The notes beneath the pieces were generated by a model. It searched no databases, had not been told where the DNA came from, and saw only the letters and a program-made list of their open reading frames with translations. A stretch of 64,000 nucleotides of DNA, taken from the IMG/VR virus record IMGVR_UViG_3300012931_000759, positions 186,001 through 250,000 of that record; one strand, 5' to 3'. A program made the position numbers and the translations under genes. Positions 16,366 through 58,708 of this stretch are shown one piece after another. Position 1 is the first letter of the stretch, and each line of letters opens with the position of its first letter.

Positions 16366-17037
16366 ATGGCTCTCAGGATTCTTCAGCCGGGCATCCAGCC
16401 GCTCGGACAGTTCGATTTCGCAGACGGTTACCTGCTTAGCGTTAAGGGCGGCGAGGTTTGTACCCTTGTGGCTCTGTCGCGCACAAACACCGCTTCCGAA
16501 AAGGCGGCTGCGGACGCGCTCGATGGCTACACCAACTACTCTCAAAACATGCGCGCTGGCCTGACCCTTAACATCGCAGTCAACACGGCCCGCCCGCTGT
16601 GGCTGACTGATGACGGCACCGGCGCCTCTGGCATCATCCAGGGGTACGGCACGCTGTTCGGCCAGGTGATCGGCACCCCTGTCGGTCTTACGACCTCGGG
16701 AACCAACCTCGGTCCCCACACCGCCCTTGCCTCTGGCAAAGTGACCGCGTGGGACAAGCCGGGCCTCTACGCTGTGACGCTCGACGCTGTCGACACTGAC
16801 GCGACGAACGGCCTTCAGCCAAGCAACGTGGCCATGGTGCCGCAGAAGGCGATCTACCCGACGATCCTCGGTGTTCTGACCCCGACGGCCGGACGTTCGG
16901 TCGGCGCTGCTGGCCCCACGGTCGCCCGTTTCGTGGAGTTTGAATCCACCGCCCGCTCTCTCGTCCGCACGCCTGCCTCGCTCGTGGGCGCGACTCCGGT
17001 CTGGGAGCACGCCGTGATTTCGTACTTTGTCGAGTAG
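16366..17037 (+). CDS. Head decoration/cement protein
   Basis: Immediately upstream of the major capsid gene, strong RBS, biased codon use; 2 DGY. Confidence 0.65.
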   Translation: MALRILQPGIQPLGQFDFADGYLLSVKGGEVCTLVALSRTNTASEKAAADALDGYTNYSQNMRAGLTLNIAVNTARPLWLTDDGTGASGIIQGYGTLFGQVIGTPVGLTTSGTNLGPHTALASGKVTAWDKPGLYAVTLDAVDTDATNGLQPSNVAMVPQKAIYPTILGVLTPTAGRSVGAAGPTVARFVEFESTARSLVRTPASLVGATPVWEHAVISYFVE

Positions 17038-17146
17038 TTGATCGTCACGAGTCGTGAAAGAACTGGTCCGATCCGGGGGTGACTCTGGATCGGATCCCAA
17101 GTAAGAGAAAGGAGCGAAAGACCATTCCACAGGAGGACAAAGAGTT

Positions 17147-18172
17147 ATGTCTCTTTTTAACACCCATGGCGAGATGAACGCCAGCGGCGTCAAGGATGCC
17201 CTTGCCCAGATCGTGAAGTATGCCACGATCCTTGAGAACATGGAGCCCGCCAACACCGGGCTCGCCCAGCAGCCCTCGTTCAACGACGAGCAGCGCGACG
17301 AACTGATCAAGCGCGCCCTTCTGACCCAGGAAGGCAAGATTGCCCTCGGTCAGGCGATGGCCAACCCAATCCGGCGTAACCTCGACTACCAGGGAGTCGG
17401 CCGCCGGGTTCTGGTGATCGACCCGCTGCCCCAGGGCGCCCTGCCCGTGTACGACCGCGATATCGACGTCGCAGCCGTGGTCGTAGCCTCGAACGGCTCG
17501 GCTCCCGAGAGCCGCGTGTTCGGTGACCGCGTGACCGTGCCGGAGTTCGAGGTCGTCTCGAATCCGACCGTGCGCATTGCCGAAGTGCGTAGACGCCGTT
17601 TCAACGTGATTGACCGTGCCCAGCAGAAAGCCCGCCAAGAGATCCAGGCCCAGGAAGACGCGAACATTTTCGCAGCCCTGGACTACGCGGCCGACGCAAC
17701 CCTCGGCGGCGAAAACACTGCCCAGGACATCGCGGACGCTGGTCTGCTCAAGCGCGACTTGTCCGAGATCAAGGTCCAGGTGGACCGCTGGGACCTGGTC
17801 ACGACCAAGTTCCTTATGAACATCCTTGAGTTCAACGACATTCTGAACTGGGGTTCGGGCGGTGGTCAGGCTGCGGGCACTGGTGGCGAGGTGGACCCAG
17901 TGACGATGCGTGAAATCCTCCAGACCGGTCTTTACGCGCATATCTGGGGCGCCGACATCATCGTCTCCAAGATCGTGCCGCCAGGCACGGTGTTCGGGAC
18001 TGCGGATCCGGAGTTCGTTGGTGTCATGCCTATCAGGCAGGACATTGAGGTACTACCTGCTGACGAACCTAAGCAGCTAAAGCTCGGCTGGGTGGTCAAT
18101 GAAATCATCGGCATCGGCATCGTGAACCCCCGTGGTGTCGCCGTTGGTCGCAAATCAGTGGCCGTCGGCTAA
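17147..18172 (+). CDS. Major capsid protein (HK97-like fold)
   Basis: 341 aa, AGGAGG RBS, strong codon bias; ARQEIQAQEDANIF backbone helix, GADIIVS, GWVVNE.IG.GIVNP; strong terminator follows. Confidence 0.85.
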   Translation: MSLFNTHGEMNASGVKDALAQIVKYATILENMEPANTGLAQQPSFNDEQRDELIKRALLTQEGKIALGQAMANPIRRNLDYQGVGRRVLVIDPLPQGALPVYDRDIDVAAVVVASNGSAPESRVFGDRVTVPEFEVVSNPTVRIAEVRRRRFNVIDRAQQKARQEIQAQEDANIFAALDYAADATLGGENTAQDIADAGLLKRDLSEIKVQVDRWDLVTTKFLMNILEFNDILNWGSGGGQAAGTGGEVDPVTMREILQTGLYAHIWGADIIVSKIVPPGTVFGTADPEFVGVMPIRQDIEVLPADEPKQLKLGWVVNEIIGIGIVNPRGVAVGRKSVAVG

Positions 18173-18203
18173 CGCCAACCGGCAACTAACTGAATCGTGA
18201 ATG

Positions 18204-22923: not shown

Positions 22924-22941
22924 CTATCAATTTTCCAGCAT
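22924..22941 (+). promoter_or_regulatory. Putative phage late promoter
   Basis: CTATCAAT TTTCCAG CAT, 30 nt upstream of ATG 22971. Confidence 0.7.
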
Positions 22942-22970
22942 TGAAAAGGAACCTTCCGAGGGAGGCATAC

Positions 22971-23246
22971 ATGAGTCGCTACAACTATTTCGGTACCATC
23001 CTGATCGACGGTTACGCGTTCCCGGAGATTCCGCAGGCCGTTTTCGATTTCAATTCTCAAGGGTTCAAATTCCTGAACCGCGGCGCGTATCCCATCGAGT
23101 ATAGTTTTGATGGAACTCATCTTCATGGTGATCTGAATCCAGCCGATGCCTCCAAGGAAATGTCGTTCGATGGGCGTTGTGAGTGTAAGGTGTTTTTCCG
23201 AGCCAAAGATGGTTACGGCATTTGTAGGGTGGAAGCCTGGAGATAG
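22971..23246 (+). CDS. Small beta-rich putative virion protein
   Basis: GGAGG RBS; 2 DGY. Confidence 0.7.
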   Translation: MSRYNYFGTILIDGYAFPEIPQAVFDFNSQGFKFLNRGAYPIEYSFDGTHLHGDLNPADASKEMSFDGRCECKVFFRAKDGYGICRVEAWR

Positions 23247-27678: not shown

Positions 27679-27999
27679 ATGTTGAAAAAAACCGCCTGCG
27701 AGATTTGCTCTATGTCGGATCTGCGCATCATACATCGCCATCATATTATTCCACGTCCAGATCCGCGTTGCCATAATGGCTCCAACAACTTAGCTTGTTT
27801 ATGTCCCAACTGTCATTCTCTTGTCCATGCGGGTGAGATTGTGATTCTAGGTGTTTATTCTTCGACCAACGGCAGATGTCTTGTTTGGCACAACAAGAAT
27901 GAACAACCGCCACTGGCCAAAGAATGTTGGTTAGTGCGAGATAATCCGCTTGTCGTCACCCTGGGCGGTGGCGAGGATGACTTGCCGGACAAGGAATAA
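27679..27999 (+). CDS. HNH endonuclease
   Basis: CEIC...HRHHIIP...NLACLCPNCH. Confidence 0.85.
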   Translation: MLKKTACEICSMSDLRIIHRHHIIPRPDPRCHNGSNNLACLCPNCHSLVHAGEIVILGVYSSTNGRCLVWHNKNEQPPLAKECWLVRDNPLVVTLGGGEDDLPDKE

Positions 28000-28000
28000 T

Positions 28001-30234: not shown

Positions 30235-30237
30235 CCC

Positions 30238-31629: not shown

Positions 31630-31637
31630 GGTGATCC

Positions 31638-32465: not shown

Positions 32466-32477
32466 GGGAGGAAAAAA

Positions 32478-33628: not shown

Positions 33629-33631
33629 GCC

Positions 33632-34282: not shown

Positions 34283-34289
34283 GAACAAT

Positions 34290-35834: not shown

Positions 35835-35838
35835 AAAT

Positions 35839-35856
35839 CTATCAATAACGAAGCAT
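35839..35856 (+). promoter_or_regulatory. Putative phage late promoter
   Basis: CTATCAAT AACGAAG CAT, intergenic. Confidence 0.7.
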
Positions 35857-43259: not shown

Positions 43260-43375
43260 AGGAAAACTTATGGGGTCGGATATGTGAAAGCCCGTACTAT
43301 TTTGACAGAACAAGGCGCGGCGGTTTCCGGGTGGGGTTGCCGCAATGAACGCTTACCGATGGAGGATTGCGCAAC

Positions 43376-46300: not shown

Positions 46301-47275
46301 GATAATATACTGAACGGTCTAGTGTATGTTGGAATAGACCTGGTCAGTCCAGCGGTAGCCGGTTACGGTGGCAGTTTCCGACACACCGTCGCAAACAATA
46401 TCGTCATCGGGACAAGCCAGAATAATAATGCGCCCGGCATCGAGAACGCGGCCAGTCAGTCGGTAGTGGTTGGAAACCATATTGTTTACCCGAACGGTGA
46501 GGGTATCCATGTGGTCGGGAACGGCGCCCTTGTGGGTAACAATAGCGTGATGGAGCCACAGGGACACGGTATCTATTTTTACGGTGGAACTGGAGTCACA
46601 ATCCTAAGTGGACTAGTTGTCGGCAACATTGTGTCCCAGAGCACAGAGAATGGAAGCGGAATTATAGTCGGAAACTCATGGGCTATCAGTATAACTGGTA
46701 ACTACGCGTACGGCTTCATTACCGGAATCTCCCTATGGCAGTTCGATGGTGGCTCCAGCATTGATTGTTCGGTTTGCGGAAATTATATCCTACAGGATCC
46801 AGTTGCCCCTGTAGGATATGCTGGCATCTATGCTGACACTACGTGTACAAGTCTCAGCATTGTGGGAAACTTCATCTTCGGATCTCAAATAGGTATCGAA
46901 TTGTTTTCCGGGGCTGTGCTAATTTCCTCGAATCAGATTGTGTGGCACAGGACTGTCGGTATTGAGGCTCATGGTATGGATGAGTTGTGTATCGTGAGCA
47001 ACTTAGTGGGTCCGCCATACCCGCTCACCCTCACAGCCGACGGCATCGATTTGACGGGGTGTATCAAAACATTGGTGGTAGGAAACCTTGCCTACGCGCA
47101 GAACATCCTCGGTTTTGGGTTTGGGACAAGTTTTGTTATCGACAGTTCGCAGCCCTCTGACGGTCTGGTGATGACTGGCAATCTCGGCAGGGCGGGTGCT
47201 GCCGCCCCATCGGACGGCGCTGGCGGAAACTGGTCGAGCGACTGGGTGATCGACGACTGTCGATGGATTTTCTAG
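43376..47275 (+). CDS. Right-handed beta-helix (pectin-lyase-like) spike/fibre protein
   Basis: Many (V/I).GN.I...GI repeats; N-terminal anchor shared with 49335; 3 DGY. Confidence 0.8.
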   Translation: MTSQYPGAIDGYQNIRIVRDSIDEVLAKDHNDNRSAVVAIEQSLGIRPQGTYGTVVARLDQADTDFATHINGIDFRHVADHIDYPGSSPSSFADGYMLSPAKLGRTVSEIVARIGASTPAGASGADKIGITPYTDPYFKYSHPSAQVRGQILGIQNDLAENATLLERTLGAFVVDGMGVTDPYGTGNIARVAAGHIVSDGRLLRFNGGDLAVPSAGSPTIYYVYAVINNGSVSIGIDDATLPSMDPLNPAVLLRKIVRDSGIWDSNLSTDIRRYGMLVNSKNFFSVGKTPSGGKDGYGCDFLSLKAAVDYVRALTPSSKLIASLRIELATDIIITSDSELEILIETDGLVIDGCGKRVIATTGVSHALFSIQANNVKIENLTLVSNCSSPFLRFADLGTTSSVDNLHINNCGIDAYPGQASGDMFLLFGETTGALTVFNAFITDNMANVVNGGIVCAAVNPYTQVLQDAKITGNIIQQQTLAAVASPGIQASVNCVVSDNLVIGGFVSGICLNAPVNTRVSNNVVLGTDYSTVAMPTGIAIWVPGPSGNGYGALVTQNIIRGVNNFGIDNNAGAQAGQLTLIANNTIDNSNISTWSYGAFGINVYSYEVPVLDNKIIWMGYPIYQANYVVGNDIYGHGIAAGDGILCVPSSSKILICNNRIYNLVIDYNLYPTGSAININGTDQAVVSGNEIQNCSVSGGVYLNAGITMGRGTEATVLGNVISYPTIGTNNMFGVSDIGDNSIVYGNIVTNQQYGAFFVSSANHVSFIGNKVYNCGATGIEMTDTAGSMVVDNLLVIDDPTLNPGSGINGFSSNCVVASNIVVGYAAGSYGIAGNFGSFRSTVVANNMVLGLHADTQGAIIMAGGWRDISVVNNIICNTKGFGIDMTGSARSIVSGNLLLGTPTGSGSGIDKVGQYSVVANNAILEYGNGTTGFGISLLDAYSSVVIGNTIAAGPDMTKGIYLDANVGSVDNLIADNILNGLVYVGIDLVSPAVAGYGGSFRHTVANNIVIGTSQNNNAPGIENAASQSVVVGNHIVYPNGEGIHVVGNGALVGNNSVMEPQGHGIYFYGGTGVTILSGLVVGNIVSQSTENGSGIIVGNSWAISITGNYAYGFITGISLWQFDGGSSIDCSVCGNYILQDPVAPVGYAGIYADTTCTSLSIVGNFIFGSQIGIELFSGAVLISSNQIVWHRTVGIEAHGMDELCIVSNLVGPPYPLTLTADGIDLTGCIKTLVVGNLAYAQNILGFGFGTSFVIDSSQPSDGLVMTGNLGRAGAAAPSDGAGGNWSSDWVIDDCRWIF

Positions 47276-47278: not shown

Positions 47279-47635
47279 ATGGCGATCATGGAGAATATTT
47301 TTCTCGCCAAAAGGCTTTACAAAGACGGATATCAATTTGATGGTTATGAGGTGACTGAACATATCGACGGTTACCAGGTCAGCTCGGTTGTCTTGAATTC
47401 GTGTGATGTAGCTCGCTTGGAAAGGCACATGAGTAAGATAGAGTACATTGTTCGCAAAGCTGATGAAATTCCTGTACCACAGCGTTGCCAGGACTCTATG
47501 ATGGAGAAGCTGTACCAAAGCCTTGCCGGACAGGTTATTGCCTTGGAGCCGACTCGTTTCGCGCGTTTGAGGGAACTTCTTACAAAACACGCGGCACTCT
47601 ATGCCGCCATCAGCAATGCCGACGGCTACAAATAG
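47279..47635 (+). CDS. Small protein with four DGY motifs
   Basis: KDGYQFDGYE, IDGYQ, ADGYK*. Confidence 0.7.
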   Translation: MAIMENIFLAKRLYKDGYQFDGYEVTEHIDGYQVSSVVLNSCDVARLERHMSKIEYIVRKADEIPVPQRCQDSMMEKLYQSLAGQVIALEPTRFARLRELLTKHAALYAAISNADGYK

Positions 47636-48416: not shown

Positions 48417-49335
48417 GACGGGCGTATCGCCAATGGAAATTTGTTCTGTGTGCGGACGGGAGAGGCGCGTCCATACAAGAAAAGATGGATTGCCAATATG
48501 TAAGGTCTGTAGACAAAAAGAGAAGAGACGGCAAAACACAGTATCCTGTGGTCGATGTGGCAGGATGAGACGATCACACTATGGGTTTTGCGCCGAATGC
48601 CTCAAAGTAGTCAGGCGCCAACAGGAGAAGTGCGCCATATGTAATGGCGAACCGGTGTATGTGAAACATGTGTGCCGATCATGCTACGACAAACAATGGC
48701 GAGCAAACAGACCGGAAATCATATGCGCATCTTGTGGGCGGATTTGCTTAGATTCCTCGCACAGGGCGCAGGGACGACCACTTTGTGTGGCGTGCTTTGT
48801 CGCCTTGCGAGTTGGGATATGCGTCGGCTGTGGCGTTGAATCACGAATTGCGAAAAGGTTGTTTGACGGCTCCATATGGTGTTGGAAATGCTACCGTCGA
48901 CACAGGTCAAAAAAGCGCTGTGACATATGTGGGATGGATGGTTTGCTCGCAATCTCCAACCCTCCCATATGTCATCAATGCTATGCGAGGGAATACAACC
49001 GCAGACCGGAAGTGTGCGCGCGCAAAGCATCGGATCTTGCGCAACGGCGGCTGATGAATGCGGATGGCAACTTTACCGCCGAGGAGTGGTTGGCGACAAT
49101 GCGCTCATGGGATTGGAGATGCGCATACTGTAGTGAAAGGCTGACAAGGAAAAACCGCTCCACGGATCACATTGTGCCTTTGACTAGGGGAGGTTCGAAC
49201 AATGCGGACAATATTGTGCCATGTTGCCGCAGCTGTAACTCCCGCAAGAACAATCGCCTGCTGTCGGAATGGTTGGCATCAGAGGACTGCGGGCGCACAT
49301 TGATACGAATTGCCGATCATCGGAGGACGGACTAA
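48400..49335 (+). CDS. HNH endonuclease with multiple CxxC repeats (start 48400 or 48433)
   Basis: CAYC...DHIVPLTRGG.N...NIVPCCRSCNSRK. Confidence 0.85.
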   Translation: MEKRPETGVSPMEICSVCGRERRVHTRKDGLPICKVCRQKEKRRQNTVSCGRCGRMRRSHYGFCAECLKVVRRQQEKCAICNGEPVYVKHVCRSCYDKQWRANRPEIICASCGRICLDSSHRAQGRPLCVACFVALRVGICVGCGVESRIAKRLFDGSIWCWKCYRRHRSKKRCDICGMDGLLAISNPPICHQCYAREYNRRPEVCARKASDLAQRRLMNADGNFTAEEWLATMRSWDWRCAYCSERLTRKNRSTDHIVPLTRGGSNNADNIVPCCRSCNSRKNNRLLSEWLASEDCGRTLIRIADHRRTD

Positions 49336-52300
49336 TGTCCAACTCGAAATACCCCAATGGCCTCGACACCGATGCCGAGTTGCCGCGAGTAGATGATGCG
49401 ATCACAGAAATCGGAGGTTTGGCTATCGACAGCCTCCGATCCGCCGTCTTCGCGATCGAGAAGGCTCTCGGCGTGAAACCGCAGGGAACGGCCGCCGACC
49501 TTGCCGGTCGGCTTGGCATGTCCCTCGACGCCAACGGCCACATCAAAGCCTCCGCCCTCTCGGGCATAGGGCTGGTGACCCTTCCGATCACTAATACACA
49601 GGTCGGCTCGGCCGCCGGCATCGAGGAGTCCAAACTCGACCTGAATTACGGCACTACCCTGCTCAAATCGTGGATCGATAGTCTCAGGGTTCGTGTGGAC
49701 GCGTTGGAGGTGACAGTTGCGACCACCATCGCACACTTTGCTGCGCATGTTACCAGTCCGTCGGTCTGGGGGCGGCACAGGACCAGCGACATCGATGCCT
49801 ATGATGTCTTCGCGGGTATGAACGCCCAAGGTGCCCTGACCAACCTCGACACGAGATTGAAGGCTCATATTGCGGATCTTGTCGACGCCCACGACGGCAG
49901 CGCAATCTCCCTCGACGCCAGTCGCTTTTCCTCGATCACTGCAACCGATGTCCAGTCGGGCGCCGAGCAGCTCGAAGCTCTACAATTGGTGGAAATCGTC
50001 CGTCACCGCGACCGGCATCACGGAAATGGGATACTTGGAACACAGGACGCCTTCCTGGCCGGAACCAGCCACGGCGAGGTGCTCATTGCCGCCTCGGCGA
50101 CAACCGCCGCCTCGATCGGGAATGGCTTCATCAAGTTCGCAGTGGCGCCCAGCGCGCCCGCCTTCCAATCTATCTCGAAAAACGACCGAATCGATTTCGT
50201 GAGCGCCGGAGGGAAAACCTACACTTTTGTCATTAGTGGCACACAGAGTACGAACCAGGTCAATATCTTCGGCTCTATGCCTGTGTCCGGGGTTGGAACC
50301 GCAACGGTGTACAAGACTGCCGAAGAGACCTTGGAGCCCTCCGTGGCTATGGTCTGTATGCGCCAGGATACACTGTCGCCGCGGCCGTCTACTCTACAGA
50401 TTGTCCACCCGTCCTCCCCCTTCATCATGAGTTCAGGCTTTCGCGGAAGCGACCTTTCGGCATCGGCTGCGAACATCCGACTGCTGTACCCCAACCAAGA
50501 CGGAAGTGGGGATACCGGCAACCTGGATGTGTACGCCGCCATGGCTGCGTTCTCGGCCGTCAAAAGCACCTGGACTGTCGAGAACATCGCCAGGACGATC
50601 AATTCTCAGCTATTCTCACCGGGCATCGGATTACCAAGATATCCGTTGGTTGCGTTTGCCTACAAGGGTGAACTTACCTTTGCCTTTGACGCGCCCGGCG
50701 CCGACGGCTATGTCGAGATCGGTGTGCCTACCGCTAACGATGCCACGAGCACTCTCGGATTTGTGTCCGGCACGAAAGAATATGCGCGTTCTTCGCGCGA
50801 TCTCTATATCGATGGATATGAGATCACTTCGGTCTCTAAACTTTTGGACGCTTACGGCCAGATTACGGCCTCCGATACAATCACCTTTACGTCCGTTAAT
50901 CTGCTCGCACTCGGCGTTAAATCGGGGCATTTGGCAAGAATCACACCATATCACAAGGGCACATATGTCATAAGTGACGTCACATCAAGCACAATTGTCT
51001 TCGACAGCGCGAACGAGCACGACTTCACCAGTTCGCCCAGCGCGCTGAACAAGCAGATCAGAGTTATAGTATATGCGGACGCCTTCTCCGTCAGCACAAC
51101 TCCTACCCAACACACATTGTACGAGGTTTTCCTCGACGGCTATGACGACGGGTATGGACCAGTGGCTGGGCTCAAGGCCTCGCCAAGAGTTGGGTATTTC
51201 GACACACCTGCTGCCCCAGGATCAGCGCTCAAAGATATCTTGGATGTGAAAGCTGTATCTCGCACTTTTGGAACGGCTTCCAGGCGTGTGTTTTTTGACT
51301 ACTCCGCGCGAACGATGGTTCTCGGCAACCCGATCACCGGCCCTTCCATCTTAAGCCTAGGTGCCAAGGTTACAATGCCTTCCTCAAGTGGAGAGGGATT
51401 TAGGTTCACCCTATATGATACCAACGGCGTGGATTACTTGGAACTTGAAGTGGCAAGTGGCCTCCCTGGCAGCGATGGTTACATGGACGTTTCCGTGTAT
51501 TCCCGTATCAGCGAGGAGCGTTTCCTACAAGTTGCAACCGTCCTACATGACGGGACCGCGTTCCAACACCTCGACGACAATAGGCAGTTCGGGAACGTAG
51601 GACGCCAGGACGTCCGTGATGATTTTACCCGCGACTACGTGTCTTATCCGCGCTCCCTACTGCGCGGCAATGGGGTCATCTACGGTTTTGTGGTCACCGG
51701 CAATGGAACGGGGACTTTGGCCGTCACGGGCGGTCAATGCTTGGTTGATGGTCAACTCAAATCCGTCGGCAAGACTTCGTTCACTATTCCTCTCGACGGG
51801 GCCACGGTGAACTATAACTTGTTCATGGACAGGGATGGCGTTCTGCGACTCATGCGGGACGACTATTTTGCCTCAGGCGTCTTGTCCACGCCTTCCACAG
51901 CTGAGTTGCTGACTAGCAGAACCGAGACCATGCTTGCCAAGGTGGAGGTAAGTGTCGCAAACACCATTACCACCATCATCGATCTCCGAAGGTTTGTTAA
52001 CGATATTGATAGTAAACTCGACCTGTTAGTTGAGGAAAACAGCATCACCCATGGCTCTTTCGCCAGCCTGAAGGCCGCCACGGACTATCTGAATAGTCTA
52101 CCATCCTCGACCGCCTGCTCCAGACGCATCAGGGTGCGCGGAGAGGTTTTCCTGTCCGAGAGCATCAGTATACCGAGGAACACGGAACTTGTGGGCGATG
52201 GGTACGGATCGGGCGGAACCTCGAATCGCAGCGCGCGCATTACATACTTGACCACCAACGCTGCTATACAAGGTAATGACGGCCTGGTCATCAGGGATTT

Positions 52301-53906
52301 GGCCTTTTTCCGAAGCGCGAATTTGCCCAATGGTTTCATCTACATGGTGAATCCATTCTCCTACCTTACGGTTGAAGGATGTACTTTCGAGTTCGGAACT
52401 GCCGACGTCAATAATAATGTCATGGTATTCGAGGCTAGCCTATCCTATGCGACGATCCGGGAGAATGTTTTCCGCAATGTTGCAACTGCTATCCAAGGGC
52501 AGAGTTTGGTCAACTACAGCAAAATTGACAACAACATTTTCGATAACTCTGACGGCACCAATGGTGTGTTTGTCAATGGCGTGTATATGAACCAAGCCTA
52601 TGACGTCAGCATCTCTGGAAACACCATGCGTGTCGCGTCTGCCGCGATGGCAGCCGGCACCGCTTTCGTCCGTCTTGGTGCTGGCAGCGGCATTGTCCAT
52701 TTTGTATGGATCATGGACAATTTTTTATTGTACTACGGAACACAGACTCCCGTAGCCAATATGGCCATGATTGATGTGAATGGAGCCAGCGTCAACACAC
52801 TTGAACTACTGATTGAACGGAACTTTCTGGCAAACACGTTTTCCAATACCGGTTTTGCAGTGGGTATTCTGTGCGCCCCGACCAGTTCGACAGCAACTGA
52901 TGTGACTGTACAGAACAACCATCTTTTCTACTTCTCGACCGTGAGTGTCGGGAAAGGCATTGTGCTGGGAAACTGCCCCTCGGCGATTGTCTCGGGCAAT
53001 GTACTGATCAGTTGCCGCAGTTCGTTCAATATTACGGGCAATGCAGACCAATTTATCTTGGCAAATAACATCGTCCGGAACGGAATTGCGGAAGCTCTCG
53101 ATACAACTTCCTGTACTAGCACTGGTATGAGTGTGCTAGGAAACCGCTTCAGCACCGATGGAACCGGTTATAACTGTTCGTTCTATCCTACCATTGATTC
53201 CGCTACAGTGTGCGGAAACATGTTTACATTCACCGGATCTTCTGGATACTCCTTGATGTTTCATTCCGGCACCAACTTCGTCATCCAAGGTAATCAATTC
53301 CTAGGCACTGTGTTTACAGTGTTTCCACAGTTGTTCATGAATGCGAACAACAACCTGGTGATGGGTAATATTCTTCGGGGAACTCCGCCAGTCGGCAGCT
53401 CCAGGATCTACGACGGCGGCACAGGCAATATCGAGATGCTCAACAAAGGACAGACATACACCGTGTGGGTATCACCTAATCGCGCAGTGTTTGCCTCCCA
53501 GTGGGCTATGGACATCAATAGCGGCTACAGCGGCTTTATCTCGCAGATTTCCGCGACAACCACAACCACCAACAACGAGGCTGCTTTTGACTTCTCAGCG
53601 CTCGATCTTCCTGCCGGGGCGCAATTGGACAAGGTTACGGTCTGGTACGGCAACTCGGGAGCAACTGGCGACATTACGTTCCAATTGTTCACGACGGACA
53701 TTTCCACCGTTACATCCACGGCTATCAGTTTAGTTGTGGATGCGGTAGCAACCGGAGGATTCCCTGCTTCGATTGATGTCACGCCCACTTCGACACATTA
53801 CATCCCTGCTGGAGGAACACAGTGGGACTCGCTGGTTGCTGTTGGAAAGAACGGAACCTCCTTCCTGAAGATAGTCTTCGGGATAAAGATAACATACATA
53901 CTGTAG
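49335..53906 (+). CDS. Large virion fibre/spike protein with C-terminal beta-helix
   Basis: GGAGG RBS; SKYPNGLD...SAVFAIEKALG anchor; beta-helix repeats; 6 DGY. Confidence 0.75.
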   Translation: MSNSKYPNGLDTDAELPRVDDAITEIGGLAIDSLRSAVFAIEKALGVKPQGTAADLAGRLGMSLDANGHIKASALSGIGLVTLPITNTQVGSAAGIEESKLDLNYGTTLLKSWIDSLRVRVDALEVTVATTIAHFAAHVTSPSVWGRHRTSDIDAYDVFAGMNAQGALTNLDTRLKAHIADLVDAHDGSAISLDASRFSSITATDVQSGAEQLEALQLVEIVRHRDRHHGNGILGTQDAFLAGTSHGEVLIAASATTAASIGNGFIKFAVAPSAPAFQSISKNDRIDFVSAGGKTYTFVISGTQSTNQVNIFGSMPVSGVGTATVYKTAEETLEPSVAMVCMRQDTLSPRPSTLQIVHPSSPFIMSSGFRGSDLSASAANIRLLYPNQDGSGDTGNLDVYAAMAAFSAVKSTWTVENIARTINSQLFSPGIGLPRYPLVAFAYKGELTFAFDAPGADGYVEIGVPTANDATSTLGFVSGTKEYARSSRDLYIDGYEITSVSKLLDAYGQITASDTITFTSVNLLALGVKSGHLARITPYHKGTYVISDVTSSTIVFDSANEHDFTSSPSALNKQIRVIVYADAFSVSTTPTQHTLYEVFLDGYDDGYGPVAGLKASPRVGYFDTPAAPGSALKDILDVKAVSRTFGTASRRVFFDYSARTMVLGNPITGPSILSLGAKVTMPSSSGEGFRFTLYDTNGVDYLELEVASGLPGSDGYMDVSVYSRISEERFLQVATVLHDGTAFQHLDDNRQFGNVGRQDVRDDFTRDYVSYPRSLLRGNGVIYGFVVTGNGTGTLAVTGGQCLVDGQLKSVGKTSFTIPLDGATVNYNLFMDRDGVLRLMRDDYFASGVLSTPSTAELLTSRTETMLAKVEVSVANTITTIIDLRRFVNDIDSKLDLLVEENSITHGSFASLKAATDYLNSLPSSTACSRRIRVRGEVFLSESISIPRNTELVGDGYGSGGTSNRSARITYLTTNAAIQGNDGLVIRDLAFFRSANLPNGFIYMVNPFSYLTVEGCTFEFGTADVNNNVMVFEASLSYATIRENVFRNVATAIQGQSLVNYSKIDNNIFDNSDGTNGVFVNGVYMNQAYDVSISGNTMRVASAAMAAGTAFVRLGAGSGIVHFVWIMDNFLLYYGTQTPVANMAMIDVNGASVNTLELLIERNFLANTFSNTGFAVGILCAPTSSTATDVTVQNNHLFYFSTVSVGKGIVLGNCPSAIVSGNVLISCRSSFNITGNADQFILANNIVRNGIAEALDTTSCTSTGMSVLGNRFSTDGTGYNCSFYPTIDSATVCGNMFTFTGSSGYSLMFHSGTNFVIQGNQFLGTVFTVFPQLFMNANNNLVMGNILRGTPPVGSSRIYDGGTGNIEMLNKGQTYTVWVSPNRAVFASQWAMDINSGYSGFISQISATTTTTNNEAAFDFSALDLPAGAQLDKVTVWYGNSGATGDITFQLFTTDISTVTSTAISLVVDAVATGGFPASIDVTPTSTHYIPAGGTQWDSLVAVGKNGTSFLKIVFGIKITYIL

Positions 53907-53915
53907 GAAAAAGAC

Positions 53916-54431: not shown

Positions 54432-55190
54432 ATGAGCACTTCGCACAGGACTTATAGCGACCTTTTTGAACTGGCTAATTTCGTTAAACAAACGGCGGTA
54501 GGGCAGGGCAAAAACCTGCTTATCGACTCGTTGCGTGAGCATTTCCGGCAAGACACGATCTACCGGTATAGCACGGACGCTTTCGGATTTCCCCTCACAC
54601 CCGACCTAACCGATCTGCCCCCGGAGATTAGCGAGACCAGAACTACTCGCATGTTTATCGGGGACATCTTCAGGTATGACAAGCGGTACCTTCCCTCGAT
54701 CACCGTCCGCCAGACCAGCGGTCGCTACTACGCCATCAGCTTCAATCAGGAGGGTACAACGCGCTACCGCGTAGACCTGGTGGTCGACGGATACGGCAAC
54801 CGATCATTGGTGAAGGTGCCAACCCACAAGGTGTTCGCCGGGGGATGGGATCAGACATTCGAGGTGCTGATCGCCGCAGAGAGCACACTGGATCGTGAGG
54901 AGTTGTCCGATATTGTCTCCTCGTATCTCATAGGAGTGGCCAGACAACCCCTGCTGGATGCCGGGCTTTTCATCAGGACGGTTTCGTATGGTGGGGAAAG
55001 GGAGGAAGATTGGGCGAATGACAAGATCTACATACAGCCTATCACGGTAGAGACTTTCTCAGAATGGAAGCGAGAAATTCCGCTAGATAGTGTCGTGGAG
55101 ACGATCAACTTTTGCTTCGAGTTCGGGATACTGGGCAGCGGCCGGTTCGACACTGTGGTCACCTTGGTCGATGCGCATAGCGCGTCCTAG
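54432..55190 (+). CDS. Putative tail completion/terminator protein
   Basis: Upstream of sheath; LPSITV, I.AES..DREELSD pattern; 1 DGY. Confidence 0.55.
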   Translation: MSTSHRTYSDLFELANFVKQTAVGQGKNLLIDSLREHFRQDTIYRYSTDAFGFPLTPDLTDLPPEISETRTTRMFIGDIFRYDKRYLPSITVRQTSGRYYAISFNQEGTTRYRVDLVVDGYGNRSLVKVPTHKVFAGGWDQTFEVLIAAESTLDREELSDIVSSYLIGVARQPLLDAGLFIRTVSYGGEREEDWANDKIYIQPITVETFSEWKREIPLDSVVETINFCFEFGILGSGRFDTVVTLVDAHSAS

Positions 55191-56098: not shown

Positions 56099-56116
56099 CT
56101 ATCAATAAACATGTAT
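56099..56116 (+). promoter_or_regulatory. Putative phage late promoter for the tail operon
   Basis: CTATCAAT AAACATG TAT. Confidence 0.65.
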
Positions 56117-56179
56117 CAGACCAAGGAAGGGCGCATCTGCGTCAGTTACGACAATTTTGCCGCCTGGAGGACTCAACCG

Positions 56180-58708
56180 ATGGTGAATATACCGGGATTG
56201 ACCGGGTACAACCAACCTGATGTGTTTTCTCGCTTCCGCACTCTGCGGCGCGCTGTCTCTATTCCTGGGGGTTTGCGCGTGCTCTCTATCATTGGTGAGG
56301 GCGAGCGTGAGGAAGTGCTTGTCGACTCCGCCAAGGGAGGTGGTCAAGACGGTTTCAACCCCTCCTTCACCGGCGTCTCGGACGGCTATGGCCGTTTCTT
56401 CAGGACGTCTGTGTATCCACTGATCCAGAACAGGACCACGTTGTACCTCAACAGCGCAAGGTTGCGCCTGCTTGAGGACACCATCGACATGTCTGGATTC
56501 CCCTCGGAGTACGATGCCAGGATCGACCCTACCACCGGCAAGATTGAACTCCAGAGCGCAGCCCTTGTCGACCAAGGCGGAACCCTCTACAAAGCCGGAT
56601 CTGGCAACACGGGCGACGGCTATCTGAGTGGCATCACTCTGCTCGACAGGAACGCTCCGGCCGAGACCTGGACCATCCGCTGTACCAGCGTTCTCAGGGA
56701 TAGTTACGGTGCGCCCCGTCGCGGACAGGCAAGTTTCAGCGCTGTCGGCAGCGTGAGCGGCCAATTGCTTGACAGTTACGGCCAGCCTTTCATCTGGAAA
56801 AGCGACGGCGTTACCCTCAGCAACAGCGTGCTCCGGTTCGCGATTTGGAATCCGACTGGCAGCGTCTTCGACGCAGGCGACCGCTTCACGGTCATAGTTT
56901 CCAGCAAGGTGCTCCAGGAGCGCGACAATCTCGAGGCCGACTACATCGCCGAACTCGACCTCAATGACCCTGAGGTTTTCACCGACCCGGCCAAACTTTA
57001 CGACAAACATGGCCAACCATCGATGACGAATATCCTGTCCCTCGGCGCCCAGATGGCTTTCGAGAACGGGGCTACCAGTGTGATGGCCGTCCAGGCCAAG
57101 CCGCCTCTTCCGAGGCGTACGTCCGAGATCGTGCTCCCGGCCAAGGATGCCACGACCGGCCTCGGCGGAGCCAGCGGTAACGCCAATCCCGACGACCTGG
57201 TCTTTTTTATCACACCGCCGGGCAAGCCTGACCGTGGGACGCAGGCCCACTTCTTCATCATTGGAACCGACGGGACCGAGACCCAGGTGTTCCCGAATAA
57301 AGTCGATTTCTACGATCCGACTATCACGGCCGCTCTTGCGATCTACGAGGACACTGGTAGCAACACCGCTCTCATGGCCGATTTCATGGATCCGGCGCAG
57401 ACCGGCATGCCATTCTCCTACACCATCGTGAGCGACGACAAGATCGAGCAGGATGGGACGGACGGCTACATCTCGATCTACGGCCTTAGCACGGGCACGT
57501 TCTACAGCCCATCGATCCAGCTGGTATCGGGCGATATCGGCAAGCTGCTCGACTTCATCAACGCCGACCCGGCCAACGAGGGGCGGTTCGAGATTACGGC
57601 GATCGTTGATCAGCACACTGCCAGGATTACCAGGATCTCCGGCAACTTCACCGCCGAGACAAATGTGCGCTGGCAGCTGCTCGCGGCTAGCGGTACCTCT
57701 CAACGCGTCCTGTTCACCACTGACCTGGCCCTCGCAGCCGGGCAGGGACTCCGAGTCACCTACATTGACGAGATGGATGTCGATTTCTACGACGCAAACT
57801 GGGCCGAGGTCCTGGACGAGCTACAAAAGCAGGATGTCCAGATCCTAGTCCCGCTGCCCACTCAGACCTTCTCGGCCATCCAGCAGGCTTTCCGCGTACA
57901 TGTAGAGCAGATGTCCAGCACCTACTACAAACGCGAACGGGTGCTGTTCACCGGCGCATTACAGGGTCTGTCGGTCGACAACGTCACGGGTGTGTCTGAG
58001 GTCGCTGTCGAGGACATAGGAATTCTCGAGGGCATCCAAGGCGACGACCCCGAGGAAATCCTCGCGGGCAACATTGAGGATCTCGCCAACTACGACGTGG
58101 CCACCAACTTCGGCGATAGTTTCCGCGTGGTGTTCTTCTATCCGGATGAGATCGTCAAGGTAATCTCCGGCAGCAACGAGACGCTGCCCGGCTACTACAT
58201 CGCAGCGGCGGCTGGTGGACGCGTGTCCGGAACTGCCAATATCGCGGAGCCGCTAACCTTCAAGACGCTGGTTGGCTTCACGATCCTGAACAGCAAGGTT
58301 TTCACCCAGGATCAGCTTAACAGATTGGGCGACCACGGCATTACGGTCCTCCAGCCTGTGACGGGCGGGGCTAAGGTTCTCCACGGCAAGACCACAACCC
58401 AGAGCGGGGCGCCGGAAGAGGAAGAGATCTCGATCGTCTTTATCCGCGACCAGGTCGCGAGGGTGATGCGCCGAAGTTTCCAAGGATTCCTCGGACATGC
58501 CGAGGATCCAACATTACTGCCGTCCCTGACGGCAAACGCTGTCGGAGTGCTCAACGCATTCATATCGCAGAATCTTCTCACCGCATACAGAAATCTGTCT
58601 GTTTCCAAGGATGATGTGGAGCCGCGTCAATACAATATACGGGTTGAAATCAGTCCGACAGCACCAGTGAATTGGATTTTCATCGATGCCAGTGTCAGCA
58701 TTTTCTAG
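56180..58708 (+). CDS. Contractile tail sheath protein
   Basis: GGAGG RBS, ATG 56180; P.V...N-terminus; HVEQMS...RER, G.TT...EISIV.IRD, PVNWIFI C-terminal sheath motifs; 3 DGY. Confidence 0.88.
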   Translation: MVNIPGLTGYNQPDVFSRFRTLRRAVSIPGGLRVLSIIGEGEREEVLVDSAKGGGQDGFNPSFTGVSDGYGRFFRTSVYPLIQNRTTLYLNSARLRLLEDTIDMSGFPSEYDARIDPTTGKIELQSAALVDQGGTLYKAGSGNTGDGYLSGITLLDRNAPAETWTIRCTSVLRDSYGAPRRGQASFSAVGSVSGQLLDSYGQPFIWKSDGVTLSNSVLRFAIWNPTGSVFDAGDRFTVIVSSKVLQERDNLEADYIAELDLNDPEVFTDPAKLYDKHGQPSMTNILSLGAQMAFENGATSVMAVQAKPPLPRRTSEIVLPAKDATTGLGGASGNANPDDLVFFITPPGKPDRGTQAHFFIIGTDGTETQVFPNKVDFYDPTITAALAIYEDTGSNTALMADFMDPAQTGMPFSYTIVSDDKIEQDGTDGYISIYGLSTGTFYSPSIQLVSGDIGKLLDFINADPANEGRFEITAIVDQHTARITRISGNFTAETNVRWQLLAASGTSQRVLFTTDLALAAGQGLRVTYIDEMDVDFYDANWAEVLDELQKQDVQILVPLPTQTFSAIQQAFRVHVEQMSSTYYKRERVLFTGALQGLSVDNVTGVSEVAVEDIGILEGIQGDDPEEILAGNIEDLANYDVATNFGDSFRVVFFYPDEIVKVISGSNETLPGYYIAAAAGGRVSGTANIAEPLTFKTLVGFTILNSKVFTQDQLNRLGDHGITVLQPVTGGAKVLHGKTTTQSGAPEEEEISIVFIRDQVARVMRRSFQGFLGHAEDPTLLPSLTANAVGVLNAFISQNLLTAYRNLSVSKDDVEPRQYNIRVEISPTAPVNWIFIDASVSIF

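What the first reader, a model, noticed from the sequence alone, without database searches (positions are those of the whole stretch)
16366..58708. Virion-wide Asp-Gly-Tyr (DGY) motif confined to predicted external virion proteins
Seen: by manual count about 49 exact DGY in 16 largely unrelated proteins (16366 x2, 22971 x2, 28001 x2, 28714 x2, 30238 x6, 31638 x2, 33632 x2, 34290 x1, 36674 x6, 38730 x1, 41274 x6, 43376 x3, 47279 x4, 49335 x6, 54432 x1, sheath x3), plus DAY/DSY/DEY variants. I found none in the major capsid, protease/scaffold, internal head proteins, tubes, chaperone or tape measure. Codons vary freely (GACGGCTAC, GATGGGTAC, GACGGATAT), so selection is on the peptide. A rough expectation from typical composition (D~6%, G~9%, Y~4%) is about 4 for the whole window. 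Inference: DGY is a sequon for a post-translational modification that coats the particle (Tyr O-glycosylation, phosphorylation or sulfation, or Asp-Gly chemistry), or a docking motif for a small decorating protein. This is the best candidate for an undescribed system.
Basis: partly seen in the sequence, partly recalled or inferred. Interest (0 to 1): 0.92.

Follow-up and report, generated by a model that had tools for sequence, protein, structure and literature searches.

The report
Asp-Gly-Tyr motif studding phage tail proteins
A huge phage and its uncultured relatives carry the tripeptide Asp-Gly-Tyr about 17 times more often than chance in their tail, baseplate, fibre and sheath-surface proteins and nowhere else. 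The best available guess is that it marks where the phage's own sugar-adding enzymes coat the particle, but no modification has been observed.

Summary
There are 49 DGY in 16 window proteins against 3.0 expected (maximum 10 in 1000 shuffles). In the whole 340-kb genome there are 108 against 14.4, and DGY is by far the most over-represented tripeptide (z = 24.6).

The signal is at the peptide level. Codons follow genome usage, and there are 108 in-frame hits against 16 off-frame and 8 on the other strand. It is highly specific: DGF, DGW, EGY, NGY and all five permutations of D, G and Y sit at chance, and only DAY is also raised (4x). It is not due to paralogy, because 101 of 108 sites are unlinked. 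It is restricted to gene blocks for tail, baseplate, fibre and sheath proteins (104 against 6.0) and is at chance elsewhere (4 against 8.5).

The pattern holds across the clade at 32-55% GC. Individual sites are retained far better than other tripeptides, yet they also turn over and form variable tandem arrays.

The outgroups, including phage G, lack the genome-wide pattern. They also lack a conserved 22-kb glycan-synthesis and glycosyltransferase cluster that lies directly downstream of the DGY-rich tail genes in every clade genome examined.

My best explanation is that D-[G/A]-Y is an acceptor sequon for phage-encoded virion glycosylation, probably on Tyr. This is circumstantial (confidence about 0.4). 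That DGY is a selected short linear motif is close to certain.

The parts
16366..17037 (+). 223-aa protein immediately upstream of the major capsid gene (possible head decoration protein, by position only). It has 2 DGY, at aa 20 and 53.
   Evidence: The site near aa 53 is kept in about 65 orthologues down to about 37% identity and is absent in the most divergent sub-clade. There is no similarity to phage G gp26.
17147..18172 (+). Major capsid protein, 0 DGY (negative control within the virion).
   Evidence: phrog_2522, E = 3e-76. 52% identical to Bacillus phage G gp27. Counts.
22941..23246 (+). 101-aa protein of unknown function, 2 DGY.
   Evidence: The G001 orthologue has 2 and the G002 orthologue has 0.
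27950..28717 (+). 255-aa protein, 2 DGY. It is the first gene of an accessory block (27950-39032) that is absent from relatives G001 and G002.
28714..30234 (+). 506-aa protein with a tail-fibre N-terminal module, 2 DGY.
   Evidence: phrog_1980 and phrog_28473, tail fibre, residues 119-190. Counts.
30238..31629 (+). 463-aa protein, 6 DGY. Five of them sit in a 22-residue tandem repeat (DGY-S-x4-PVK-x-VSPNR-x5).
   Evidence: This is one of the few cases where DGY copies are homologous repeats.
31638..32465 (+). 275-aa protein, 2 DGY.
33632..34282 (+). 216-aa protein, 2 DGY. Its N-terminus is paralogous to that of the 531-aa protein.
34290..35834 (+). AAA+ ATPase with a proteasomal-ATPase OB domain, 1 DGY (probably chance; not a structural protein).
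   Evidence: PF00004, E = 5e-30. Absent from G001 and G002, which still show the DGY excess, so it is not needed for the phenomenon.
36674..38269 (+). 531-aa fibre-like protein, 6 DGY (aa 25, 130, 140, 259, 350, 397).
   Evidence: Forty-one homologues at 40-68% identity carry 3-9 DGY each against about 0.2 expected. Sites 25 and 130 are invariant in all 30 aligned homologues, site 140 is DGY in 29 of 30, and site 350 turns over.
38730..39032 (+). 100-aa protein, 1 DGY.
41274..43259 (+). 661-aa virion protein, 6 DGY. It has a tandem array of five DGY within 21 residues (aa 341-361), a poly-Pro tract, a Cys4 motif and C-terminal HxH motifs.
   Evidence: phrog_38102, virion structural protein. 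The array is conserved in G001 and G002 with different copy number and spacing, and G002 has extra DGY elsewhere.
43367..47275 (+). 1302-aa right-handed beta-helix protein (tailspike-like), 3 DGY, all in the N-terminal 300 residues.
   Evidence: PF13229, E = 2e-23..
47279..47635 (+). 118-aa protein, 4 DGY: three within 17 residues near the N-terminus and one at the penultimate position of the C-terminus.
49269..53906 (+). 1545-aa beta-helix protein (tailspike-like), 6 DGY.
   Evidence: PF05048. Orthologues carry 3 (G001) and 5 (G002).
54432..55190 (+). 252-aa protein upstream of the sheath, 1 DGY, kept in both orthologues.
56111..58708 (+). Tail sheath (probable start 56180), 3 DGY, all in the non-conserved N-terminal and insert domains and none in the conserved C-terminal core.
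   Evidence: phrog_279 and phrog_2839 match residues 554-865 only. Foldseek hits sheath proteins of phiCD508, phi812 and T4. The sites at model residues 68 and 146 are widely conserved in orthologues and lie in low-confidence coil just before strands; site 428 lies in a strand.
58733..59995 (+). Two tube-like proteins (58733-59311 and 59393-59995), 0 DGY (internal virion controls).
   Evidence: phrog_985. Counts.
61099..63327 (+). 742-aa Tyr-poor protein (putative tape measure, by position only), 0 DGY.
   Evidence: no family hit.

Best explanation
D-[G>A]-Y is a short linear motif under positive and purifying selection on the accessible parts of the tail, baseplate, fibre and sheath-surface proteins of this phage G-related clade of huge phages, and probably on one head-surface protein.

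The most likely function is an acceptor sequon. A phage-encoded, cytoplasmic glycosyltransferase would recognise Asp-Gly-Tyr and start a glycan on it. The acceptor is most plausibly the Tyr hydroxyl, with Asp at position -2 as the recognition residue. The other transferases and methyltransferases of the adjacent 22-kb cluster would then extend the glycan, using 6-deoxyhexose and 3-amino-3,6-dideoxyhexose nucleotide sugars made by the phage itself. The result would be a sugar coat over the outside of the tail and fibres.

Shown:
- the enrichment, its specificity and its peptide-level nature
- its restriction to virion gene blocks
- its conservation and turnover across the clade
- the presence, synteny and clade-restriction of the glycan cluster
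- the absence of lipid-carrier initiating enzymes.

Inferred:
- that the cluster acts on virion proteins
- that DGY is what it recognises
- that Tyr is the acceptor
- that the sites are exposed.
For: 1. Strength. DGY is 108 against 14.4 genome-wide and 104 against 6.0 in virion blocks. There, 37% of all Asp-Gly dipeptides are followed by Tyr and 11% of all Tyr lie in DGY, against 1% and 0.2% elsewhere.

2. Chemical specificity. This fits recognition of a Tyr hydroxyl plus an Asp carboxylate rather than turn propensity. The counts are DGF 9/6.6, DGW 3/1.8, EGY 1/3.5 and NGY 5/4.3. The permutations YGD, DYG, GDY, GYD and YDG give 5, 1, 5, 8 and 11 against 6.0 expected each. Only DAY is raised, at 21/5.3. 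At conserved sites the alternates seen are EGY, DAY and DSY.

3. Behaviour of a short linear motif.
- There is no flanking consensus beyond a weak aliphatic preference at positions -1 and +1.
- 101 of 108 sites are unlinked by paralogy.
- Tandem arrays such as DGY-GP-DGY-R-DGY-DGY have variable copy number between orthologues.
- 62% of sites are retained between G000 and G002, against 17% for other tripeptides and 24% expected from per-residue conservation. G002 also has 10 new sites.

4. Clade-wide and independent of GC content.
- 348 against 43 in 80 loci at 32-55% GC.
- Coding/non-coding strand counts of 102/8, 69/1, 57/15, 58/10 and 23/9 in five related genomes.
- DGY is the top tripeptide in G001 and third in G002.

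5. A glycan cluster lies at genome positions 278-300 kb, directly after the 955-aa DGY-rich tail protein. It contains a double GT4 (756 aa), a CgeB-like+GT2 protein (1149 aa), three or four further GT2 or GT47-like proteins, two methyltransferases, FdtA, a DegT aminotransferase, GDP-mannose 4,6-dehydratase and three epimerase/reductases. It is syntenic in G001 and G002.

6. Co-occurrence.
- GT2 is present in all six clade genomes (five, G005).
- GDP-Man dehydratase is present in 6 of 6 clade genomes.
- Outgroups without the genome-wide DGY bias (phage G, Rctr197k, LR745208, Tunturi_5) have GDP-Man dehydratase in 0 of 4 and no or only weak GT2.

7. No Bac_transf phosphoglycosyl transferase was found in any clade genome. 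This fits building the glycan directly on protein in the cytoplasm, where virions assemble.

8. No conserved kinase, sulfotransferase, PCMT or 2OG oxygenase was found.

9. In the sheath, all sites are outside the conserved core. Six of the 9 modelled sites fall in low-confidence coil.
Against: - No modification has been observed. Everything linking DGY to the glycan cluster is co-occurrence and gene neighbourhood, and it amounts to one phylogenetic contrast (one clade against its outgroups).
- The cluster could serve DNA glycosylation or alteration of the host surface instead.
- Non-virion proteins, which share the cytoplasm with any such enzyme, do not avoid DGY: 4 against 8.5, 5 against 5.1 and 8 against 5.7 in three genomes. 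A pure tripeptide sequon would therefore hit them too, unless context, timing or tolerance matters.
- Several sites are invariant over 40% sequence divergence, which is stricter than typical glycan-shield sites and hints at a structural or assembly role.
- Two of the nine modelled sites lie within beta-strands.
- No DGY consensus is known for any tyrosine glycosylation system. The S-layer review read here (PMC2943079) does not use the word 'consensus'.
- The major capsid protein has no DGY.
Confidence: 0.4

Rival explanations
1. DGY is a docking or interface motif. A small decorating, cementing or fibre protein, or neighbouring subunits, would bind Asp-Gly-Tyr loops, so the motif acts as assembly 'velcro' on the outside of the tail rather than being chemically modified.
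For: - Several sites are invariant over more than 40 homologues, which fits interfaces.
- The motif is restricted to assembled virion parts.
- Tandem arrays would give avidity.
- DGY is not avoided in non-virion proteins, as expected if binding matters only in the particle.
Against: - No candidate binder has been identified.
- The motif occurs in very different proteins and positions, including the extreme termini and low-complexity arrays. It is hard to see one partner reaching all of them.
- The co-occurring glycan cluster would be left unexplained.
Confidence: 0.2
2. DGY is a structural or ligand-binding micro-motif. It could be a favoured turn-plus-aromatic element of beta-rich fibre folds, or a minimal Asp/Tyr site for weak binding of host polysaccharide or metal ions. 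It would have spread by convergent selection for stability or adherence.
For: - There is a weak aliphatic preference at -1 and +1, and frequent placement just before a beta-strand.
- The host proteins are beta-rich (beta-helix, Ig-like, sheath insert domains).
- In phage G, DGY lies inside one homologous repeat.
Against: - Generic turn propensity would favour NGY and tolerate DGF or DGW, yet these are at chance.
- DGY-DGY tandems and arrays in Gly/Pro-rich linkers are not fold elements.
- The outgroup genomes, whose capsid proteins are related, show no genome-wide excess of the motif.
- Three residues cannot form a binding pocket alone.
Confidence: 0.2
3. DGY is a sequon for a different modification: Tyr phosphorylation, sulfation, nucleotidylation or oxidative cross-linking, or Asp-Gly isoaspartate chemistry. 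The modification would be made by a host enzyme or by an unrecognised phage enzyme.
For: - The requirement for Tyr rather than Phe, and for Asp rather than Asn or Glu.
- Tyr/Gly-rich arrays resemble cross-linkable elastomer motifs (the resemblance is from my own knowledge).
Against: No Pkinase, sulfotransferase, PCMT or 2OG-oxygenase family is conserved across the clade. Hosts differ widely (GC 32-55%), which makes dependence on one host enzyme less likely.
Confidence: 0.1
4. The pattern is an artefact: chance, amino-acid composition, a DNA-level signal or duplicated repeats.
For: About 20 of the 108 sites do lie in internal repeats, in the 1384-aa protein and the 463-aa protein.
Against: - Shuffles never exceed 25 genome-wide, against 108 observed.
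- Permutations of the same three residues are at chance.
- Off-frame and opposite-strand counts are low, and codons are free.
- 101 independent site components remain after linking paralogous sites.
- The pattern is replicated in relatives with different GC content.
Confidence: 0.01

Closest known systems
Mycobacteriophage virion glycosylation (Freeman et al. 2023, as summarised in PMC12619734)
   Same: Phage-encoded glycosyltransferases sit close to structural genes, and glycans are proposed or shown on the outside of the particle.
   Different: There the glycans sit on the C-termini of capsid and tail-tube subunits, and only a few transferases are involved. Here capsid and tube lack the motif. 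The candidate sites are a defined tripeptide scattered through sheath outer domains, baseplate, spikes and fibres. The cluster also includes whole nucleotide-sugar pathways. No glycan has been observed here.
Bacterial sequon-directed protein glycosylation: Bacteroidota D-(S/T)-(A/I/L/V/M/T) and Campylobacter PglB D/E-X-N-X-S/T (my own knowledge)
   Same: A very short linear sequon begins with an acidic residue. In PglB the acid lies at -2 from the acceptor, as Asp lies at -2 from Tyr in DGY. Many unrelated surface proteins are targeted.
   Different: Those systems transfer lipid-linked glycans en bloc in the periplasm to Ser, Thr or Asn. Here no phosphoglycosyl transferase was found, assembly is cytoplasmic, and the putative acceptor is Tyr.
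Tyrosine O-glycosylation of bacterial S-layer proteins in Paenibacillus alvei, Thermoanaerobacter and Thermoanaerobacterium (PMC2943079)
   Same: Tyr-linked glycans on a self-assembling surface array. The enzymology is related: multi-domain transferases, methyltransferases and a QdtB-type sugar aminotransferase. The S-layer role of FdtA-type isomerases and GDP-6-deoxyhexose enzymes is from my own knowledge. The phage has FdtA, DegT and GDP-mannose dehydratase.
   Different: Only 2-4 sites per S-layer protein, and the review read here states no consensus motif. The glycan is built on a lipid carrier and transferred by an O-oligosaccharyltransferase outside the cytoplasm.
Self-encoded particle glycosylation of giant eukaryotic viruses: chlorovirus capsid, mimivirus fibrils (my own knowledge)
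   Same: The virus carries its own nucleotide-sugar pathways and transferases to coat its own particle, using non-canonical acceptor sites.
   Different: These are eukaryotic hosts and unrelated proteins, and no DGY-type tripeptide is known for them.
CgeB-type glycosyltransferases of Bacillus spore maturation (Pfam PF13524; Atlas 'CgeB family' cluster)
   Same: The 1149-aa phage enzyme carries this domain. CgeB-family enzymes are associated with glycosylation of a proteinaceous surface layer, the spore crust (my own knowledge).
   Different: This is domain-level similarity only. The acceptor specificity is unknown in both cases.

Membership tests
Sequon for protein glycosylation (generic) | A short linear motif containing a residue that can accept a glycan, over-represented in the target proteins | tested here: met
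   DGY is 104 against 6.0 in virion blocks. Tyr cannot be replaced by Phe or Trp, and Asp cannot be replaced by Glu or Asn.
Sequon for protein glycosylation (generic) | Cognate glycosyltransferase(s) encoded with, and co-distributed with, the motif | tested here: inconclusive
   A cluster is present, syntenic and next to the DGY-rich tail genes in clade genomes, and absent in 4 outgroups. However, this is a single phylogenetic contrast and no enzyme-substrate link is shown.
Sequon for protein glycosylation (generic) | Glycan demonstrably attached at the motif | not testable with these tools
   This needs mass spectrometry or glycan staining of virions or of co-expressed proteins.
Sequon for protein glycosylation (generic) | Motif lies on accessible surface | tested here: inconclusive
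   Sheath sites lie outside the conserved core. Of 9 modelled sites, 6 are in coil with pLDDT below 50, 1 in confident coil and 2 in strands. The models are poor (pLDDT 63 and 66) and no coordinates were available to compute accessibility.
Mycobacteriophage-type virion glycosylation | Acceptor sites at the C-termini of capsid and tail-tube subunits | tested here: not met
   The major capsid protein and both tube-like proteins have no DGY or DAY. The motif lies in other proteins and at internal positions.
Mycobacteriophage-type virion glycosylation | Phage-encoded glycosyltransferases near structural genes | tested here: met
   The cluster starts about 2.6 kb after the 955-aa tail protein and lies between two DGY-rich structural blocks.
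S-layer-type tyrosine O-glycosylation (lipid-linked, oligosaccharyltransferase-dependent) | Initiating phosphoglycosyl transferase on a lipid carrier (WsfP/WbaP type, Bac_transf) | tested here: not met
   PF02397 is absent from all five clade genomes searched, while the control genomes are positive.
S-layer-type tyrosine O-glycosylation (lipid-linked, oligosaccharyltransferase-dependent) | Tyr as the linkage residue | not testable with these tools
   Only indirect evidence is available: DGF is at chance and DGY is 17-fold enriched.
Homologous repeat domain or generic beta-turn motif | DGY copies share flanking sequence or homology | tested here: not met
   Only 7 of 108 sites are linked by BLAST between proteins. 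About 20 lie in internal repeats, judged by eye. There is no flanking consensus.
Homologous repeat domain or generic beta-turn motif | Chemically similar turns (NGY, DGF, DGW) are equally favoured | tested here: not met
   All are at chance.
DNA-level signal (site, repeat or packaging motif) | Fixed nucleotide word, independent of reading frame | tested here: not met
   Fifteen different nucleotide versions occur in proportion to codon usage. There are 108 in-frame against 16 off-frame hits. The motif is conserved at 32-55% GC.

The most novel reading that the evidence does not exclude
A clade of huge phages runs its own cytoplasmic, sequon-directed tyrosine O-glycosylation system. One tripeptide, Asp-Gly-Tyr, written about a hundred times into otherwise unrelated tail, baseplate, fibre and sheath-surface proteins, directs a phage-made glycan onto the whole outer surface of the particle. 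This would be the first defined sequon for tyrosine glycosylation and the first virion-wide glycan coat described for a tailed phage.
Probability: 0.3. Interest if true: 0.9.

Novelty: new variant of a known kind. Interest (0 to 1): 0.8.

Why it matters
- Full-text searches for 'DGY motif' with 'phage' and for 'DGY' with 'tail fiber' found nothing, and I know of no comparable tripeptide signature in phage proteins. Here one chemically precise tripeptide accounts for a tenth of all tyrosines in the tail proteins of a whole clade of uncultured 300-450-kb phages, so something recognises it.
- If that something is the adjacent glycosylation machinery, the motif would give a readable map of where a phage particle is sugar-coated.
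- It would also supply a simple peptide tag and enzyme set for tyrosine glycoengineering.
- It would give a way to recognise glycosylated virions from sequence alone. This bears on phage adsorption, environmental stability and recognition by antibodies or host defences.
- If the motif is instead a docking or assembly element, it would still be a new organising principle for building very long contractile tails.
- Either outcome can be tested with a short peptide substrate.

Tried and rejected
- **DNA-level motif:** rejected by the frame, strand and codon analysis.
- **Composition or chance:** rejected by shuffles and by the permutation controls.
- **Paralogous domains:** an all-against-all BLAST of the 34 DGY proteins links only 7 sites.
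- **Generic turn propensity:** NGY, DGF, DGW and EGY are at chance.
- **Avoidance of DGY in non-virion proteins (expected for a promiscuous cytoplasmic enzyme):** not seen, at 4/8.5, 5/5.1 and 8/5.7. Only a marginal hint exists in the own genome, where 1% of Asp-Gly dipeptides are followed by Tyr against a Tyr frequency of 2.6%.
- **Phage G as a cultured model:** it shows only a weak excess, and within its tail genes DGY lies mostly in one repeat (GRHTDGYWYVRG). It has no GDP-mannose dehydratase and only a sub-threshold GT2, so it is not a usable model.
- **Other enzyme classes:** Pkinase occurs in 1 of 5 genomes, Sulfotransfer_3 reaches threshold in none, PCMT occurs in 1 of 6 and 2OG-FeII_Oxy_3 in 0 of 6.
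- **Genes inside the window as the responsible factor:** the AAA+ ATPase and the metallophosphoesterase lie in an accessory block missing from G001 and G002, which still have the motif.
- **A sub-clade whose pre-capsid protein lacks DGY, as a natural negative control:** its contigs are fragments that do not reach the tail and glycan region, so the test was uninformative.
- **Structure mapping:** both AlphaFold models were of low confidence and coordinates are not exposed, so solvent accessibility could not be computed.
- **PDB sequence search with the two large transferases:** only generic GT4 hits or none.
- **Search for the double-GT4 protein in other viral lineages:** it returned clade members only, so no independent lineage is available.
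- **Literature searches for a DGY motif in phages or tail fibres:** nothing found.
- **Freeman et al. 2023:** the paper is not held in the library.

Full report
**What the window is**

The window is bases 186001-250000 of a single 340,392-bp virus contig with 55.7% GC. Almost all genes lie on the + strand.
- The major capsid protein (window 17147-18172) matches phrog_2522 and is 52% identical to gp27 of Bacillus phage G.
- A contractile sheath lies at 56111-58708. Two tube-like genes and two large beta-helix spike-like proteins follow the usual myovirus layout.
- IMG/VR holds hundreds of relatives whose capsid proteins are 74-97% identical, on contigs of up to 448 kb.
- This is therefore an uncultured clade of huge phages related to phage G.

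**Check of the observation**

- Expectation from each protein's own composition is 3.0. In 1000 within-protein shuffles the mean was 3.0 and the maximum 10.
- Genome-wide there are 108 against 14.4, z = 24.6. The runners-up among all 8000 tripeptides (PDG, GYL) reach only z of about 6.5 and are partly the same motif.
- At the nucleotide level GAYGGNTAY occurs 108 times in frame, 16 times off frame within genes and 8 times on the other strand. Fifteen codon versions occur in proportion to genome codon usage.
- Selection is therefore on the peptide, and the signal is not a DNA word.

**Specificity**

Within the DGY-rich gene blocks the counts are:
- DGY 104 against 6.0 expected.
- DGF 9/6.6, DGW 3/1.8, DGH 3/2.3, EGY 1/3.5, NGY 5/4.3 and SGY 3/7.1.
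- The five other orderings of D, G and Y give 5, 1, 5, 8 and 11 against 6.0 expected each.
- Only DAY is also raised, at 21/5.3.

In these blocks 37% of all Asp-Gly dipeptides are followed by Tyr and 11% of all tyrosines lie in DGY. In the rest of the genome the figures are 1% and 0.2%. Flanks carry almost no information, only a mild preference for aliphatic residues at -1 and +1. A general beta-turn preference would favour Asn-Gly and tolerate Phe or Trp, so it does not explain the data.

**Not one repeat family**

An all-against-all BLAST of the 34 DGY-bearing proteins aligns only 7 DGY sites to one another, leaving 101 independent components. By eye, roughly 20 further sites lie in internal repeats. 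These are three repeat types in a 1384-aa fibre-like protein outside the window and a 22-residue tandem repeat in the 463-aa protein at 30238. Removing them leaves about 85 sites against 14 expected.

Many sites sit in arrays that cannot be fold elements. Examples are five DGY within 21 residues in the 661-aa protein, DGY-DGY doublets in four proteins, and three DGY within 17 residues plus a C-terminal DGY-K in a 118-aa protein.

**Where it is and is not**

DGY falls in four blocks: genome 116-133 kb, the window from 16366 onward and continuing to 276 kb, and 321-335 kb.
- Annotated members are the sheath, a Baseplate_J protein and its 2302-aa neighbour, a dockerin-bearing 955-aa protein, Big_5 (Ig-like) proteins, beta-helix spikes and a tail-fibre N-terminal module.
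- Taken together these blocks hold 104 DGY against 6.0 expected. The other 246 genes hold 4 against 8.5.
- DGY-free proteins include the capsid protein, a 1326-aa protein with a head-protease domain, a 1216-aa protein with a lysin-like domain, both tube-like proteins and a 742-aa putative tape measure. Tyr-rich non-structural proteins, such as a 378-aa methylase-like protein with 24 Tyr, are also DGY-free.
- In the sheath all three sites lie outside the conserved C-terminal core, which is the only part that matches sheath profiles.

**Conservation in relatives**

- Forty-one homologues of the 531-aa protein (40-68% identity) carry 3-9 DGY each against about 0.2 expected. In the 30-sequence alignment, sites 25 and 130 are invariant and site 140 is DGY in 29 of 30, amid poorly conserved flanks. 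Other sites come and go.
- Eighty loci around the capsid gene, at 32-55% GC, hold 348 DGY against 43 expected. Twenty-one loci around the sheath show the same excess.
- Five related genomes show strand-biased counts of 102/8, 69/1, 57/15, 58/10 and 23/9.
- I fetched two of these genomes whole. DGY is the top tripeptide in G001 (73 against 17) and the third in G002 (62 against 14).
- Orthologues keep similar numbers: sheath 3/3/3, Baseplate_J 2/2/2, the 2302-aa protein 8/5/7 and the 955-aa protein 5/5/6.
- Site by site, 62% of G000 sites align to DGY in G002. This compares with 17% for other tripeptides and 24% expected from the conservation of D, G and Y elsewhere. G002 also has 10 DGY at new positions.
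- The array in the 661-aa protein is kept in all three genomes with different copy number and spacing.
- Singleton DGY in non-structural proteins are not conserved.

This combination of strong retention, turnover and variable multiplicity is how short linear motifs behave.

**Outgroups**

- Phage G has 52 forward and 6 reverse hits in 497 kb, against a control of 19. Within its tail genes, most DGY belong to one repeat.
- Rctr197k, LR745208 and Tunturi_5 show no clear strand-biased excess; Tunturi_5 is at most about twice its control on both strands.
- The genome-wide motif therefore arose within, or at the base of, the uncultured clade.

**What could read the motif**

I searched the clade genomes for enzyme families.
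- No protein kinase, sulfotransferase, isoaspartyl methyltransferase or 2OG oxygenase is conserved.
- There is instead a 22-kb glycan cluster starting 2.6 kb downstream of the 955-aa DGY-rich tail protein, at genome 278204-300343. That is about 28 kb beyond the window's end.
- Its genes are:
 - a 756-aa double GT4
 - a 1149-aa protein with CgeB-like and GT2 domains
 - further GT2 and GT47-like proteins
 - two methyltransferases
 - FdtA
 - a DegT aminotransferase
 - GDP-mannose 4,6-dehydratase
 - three epimerase/reductases.
- The cluster is syntenic in G001 and G002. GT2 is present in all six clade genomes searched, and so is GDP-mannose dehydratase.
- The four outgroups have no GDP-mannose dehydratase and no or only weak GT2.
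- No Bac_transf phosphoglycosyl transferase is present. There is thus no sign of this lipid-carrier route, which surface polysaccharide and S-layer glycan synthesis commonly use. This fits transferases acting directly on proteins in the cytoplasm, where virions assemble.
- Roughly, the genomes with more transferase hits also have more DGY. This is confounded by phylogeny and by genome completeness.

**Interpretation**

What is firmly shown is that D-[G>A]-Y is a selected, chemically specific, clade-wide short linear motif of tail and surface virion proteins.

The most economical mechanism is that it is the acceptor sequon of the phage's own glycosylation system. Tyr would be the acceptor because Phe does not substitute, and Asp at -2 would be the recognition residue, as in the PglB sequon (my own knowledge). 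Precedents:
- glycosylated mycobacteriophage virions (cited in PMC12619734)
- tyrosine-linked S-layer glycans made with related enzymes (PMC2943079)
- self-glycosylating giant viruses (my own knowledge).

Weaknesses:
- There is no chemical evidence.
- The co-occurrence is a single phylogenetic contrast.
- Non-virion proteins do not avoid DGY.
- Some sites are invariant, which suggests an additional structural or assembly role.
- The structure models are poor: pLDDT 63 and 66, with 6 of 9 sites in low-confidence coil, 1 in confident coil and 2 in strands.

Rivals that remain open are a docking or interface motif, a structural or ligand-binding micro-motif, and another modification. Artefact is excluded.

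**Verdict**

A modification sequon is the leading hypothesis, and glycosylation is now favoured over phosphorylation or sulfation.
- Under that reading this is a new variant of known virion and protein glycosylation. The virion-wide tripeptide signature itself appears undescribed.
- Interest is high because the signal is very strong and the hypothesis can be tested with a short peptide and a defined gene set.

Noticed in passing
outside the window: genome 278204-300343 (L084:13204 to L088:15343): A 22-kb glycan-synthesis cluster lies between two structural gene blocks. It has double GT4, CgeB-like+GT2, GT2s, a GT47-like protein, methyltransferases, FdtA, DegT, GDP-mannose dehydratase and epimerases. 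It is interrupted by a GIY-YIG/HTH homing-endonuclease-like gene at 293273-294481.
   Followed up: yes
window 2979-3644, 18325-19911, 19650-20699, 23250-23969, 26168-26800, 48277-49335: There is an unusual density of homing-endonuclease genes in the structural region: HNH, an HNH_repeat protein, two LAGLIDADG and one GIY-YIG. The ORFs at 18325-19911 and 19650-20699 overlap and both hit phrog_22655, which may indicate an interrupted or mis-called gene.
   Followed up: no
window 27950-39032: An 11-kb accessory block has no orthologues in relatives G001 and G002, although homologues occur on other metagenomic contigs. It holds several DGY-rich fibre-like proteins, a calcineurin-like phosphoesterase (32783-33628) and an AAA+ ATPase with a proteasomal-ATPase OB domain (34290-35834). 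It looks like a swappable fibre module with its own assembly ATPase.
   Followed up: partly
window 40775-41260: A 161-aa protein has a weak match to the eCIS core domain (PF13699). Together with the AAA+ ATPase, this gives the tail module a resemblance to extracellular contractile injection systems.
   Followed up: no
window 41274-43259: Besides its DGY array, the 661-aa protein has a run of ten prolines, a Cys-x-Cys...Cys-x-x-Cys motif and C-terminal HxH repeats. The HxH repeats are reminiscent of the metal-binding fibre tips of T4-type fibres (my own knowledge).
   Followed up: no
window 56111-56180: The annotated sheath ORF begins 23 codons upstream of the start used by nearly all orthologues. 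The true start is probably the ATG at 56180.
   Followed up: yes
outside the window: genome 300300-301790: A tubulin/FtsZ-family GTPase (PF00091, E = 3e-13) lies immediately after the glycan cluster. It is conserved in G001 and G002 and may be a PhuZ/TubZ-like phage cytoskeleton.
   Followed up: no
outside the window: genome 272707-275574 (L084:7707-10574): The 955-aa DGY-rich tail protein carries a type I dockerin domain (PF00404, E = 2e-8). This suggests calcium-dependent attachment of another module.
   Followed up: no
window 3622-7602 and 10201-13851: Two very large proteins (1326 aa and 1216 aa) lie upstream of the capsid gene. One has a head-maturation-protease domain and the other a lysin-like domain near the N-terminus. 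They are probably internal head or ejection proteins. They are Tyr-poor and DGY-free.
   Followed up: partly
loci L056, L065, L066, L071, L074, L077, L079, L054, L036: In this sub-clade the orthologue of the 223-aa pre-capsid protein lacks the otherwise conserved DGY, and the loci show little DGY. It is a potential natural negative control if longer contigs can be found.
   Followed up: partly
relative G002 (whole contig): In G002 the tripeptides HRT, WWK and VWW are even more over-represented than DGY (z = 12-15). This is presumably from a repeated protein family and was not examined.
   Followed up: no
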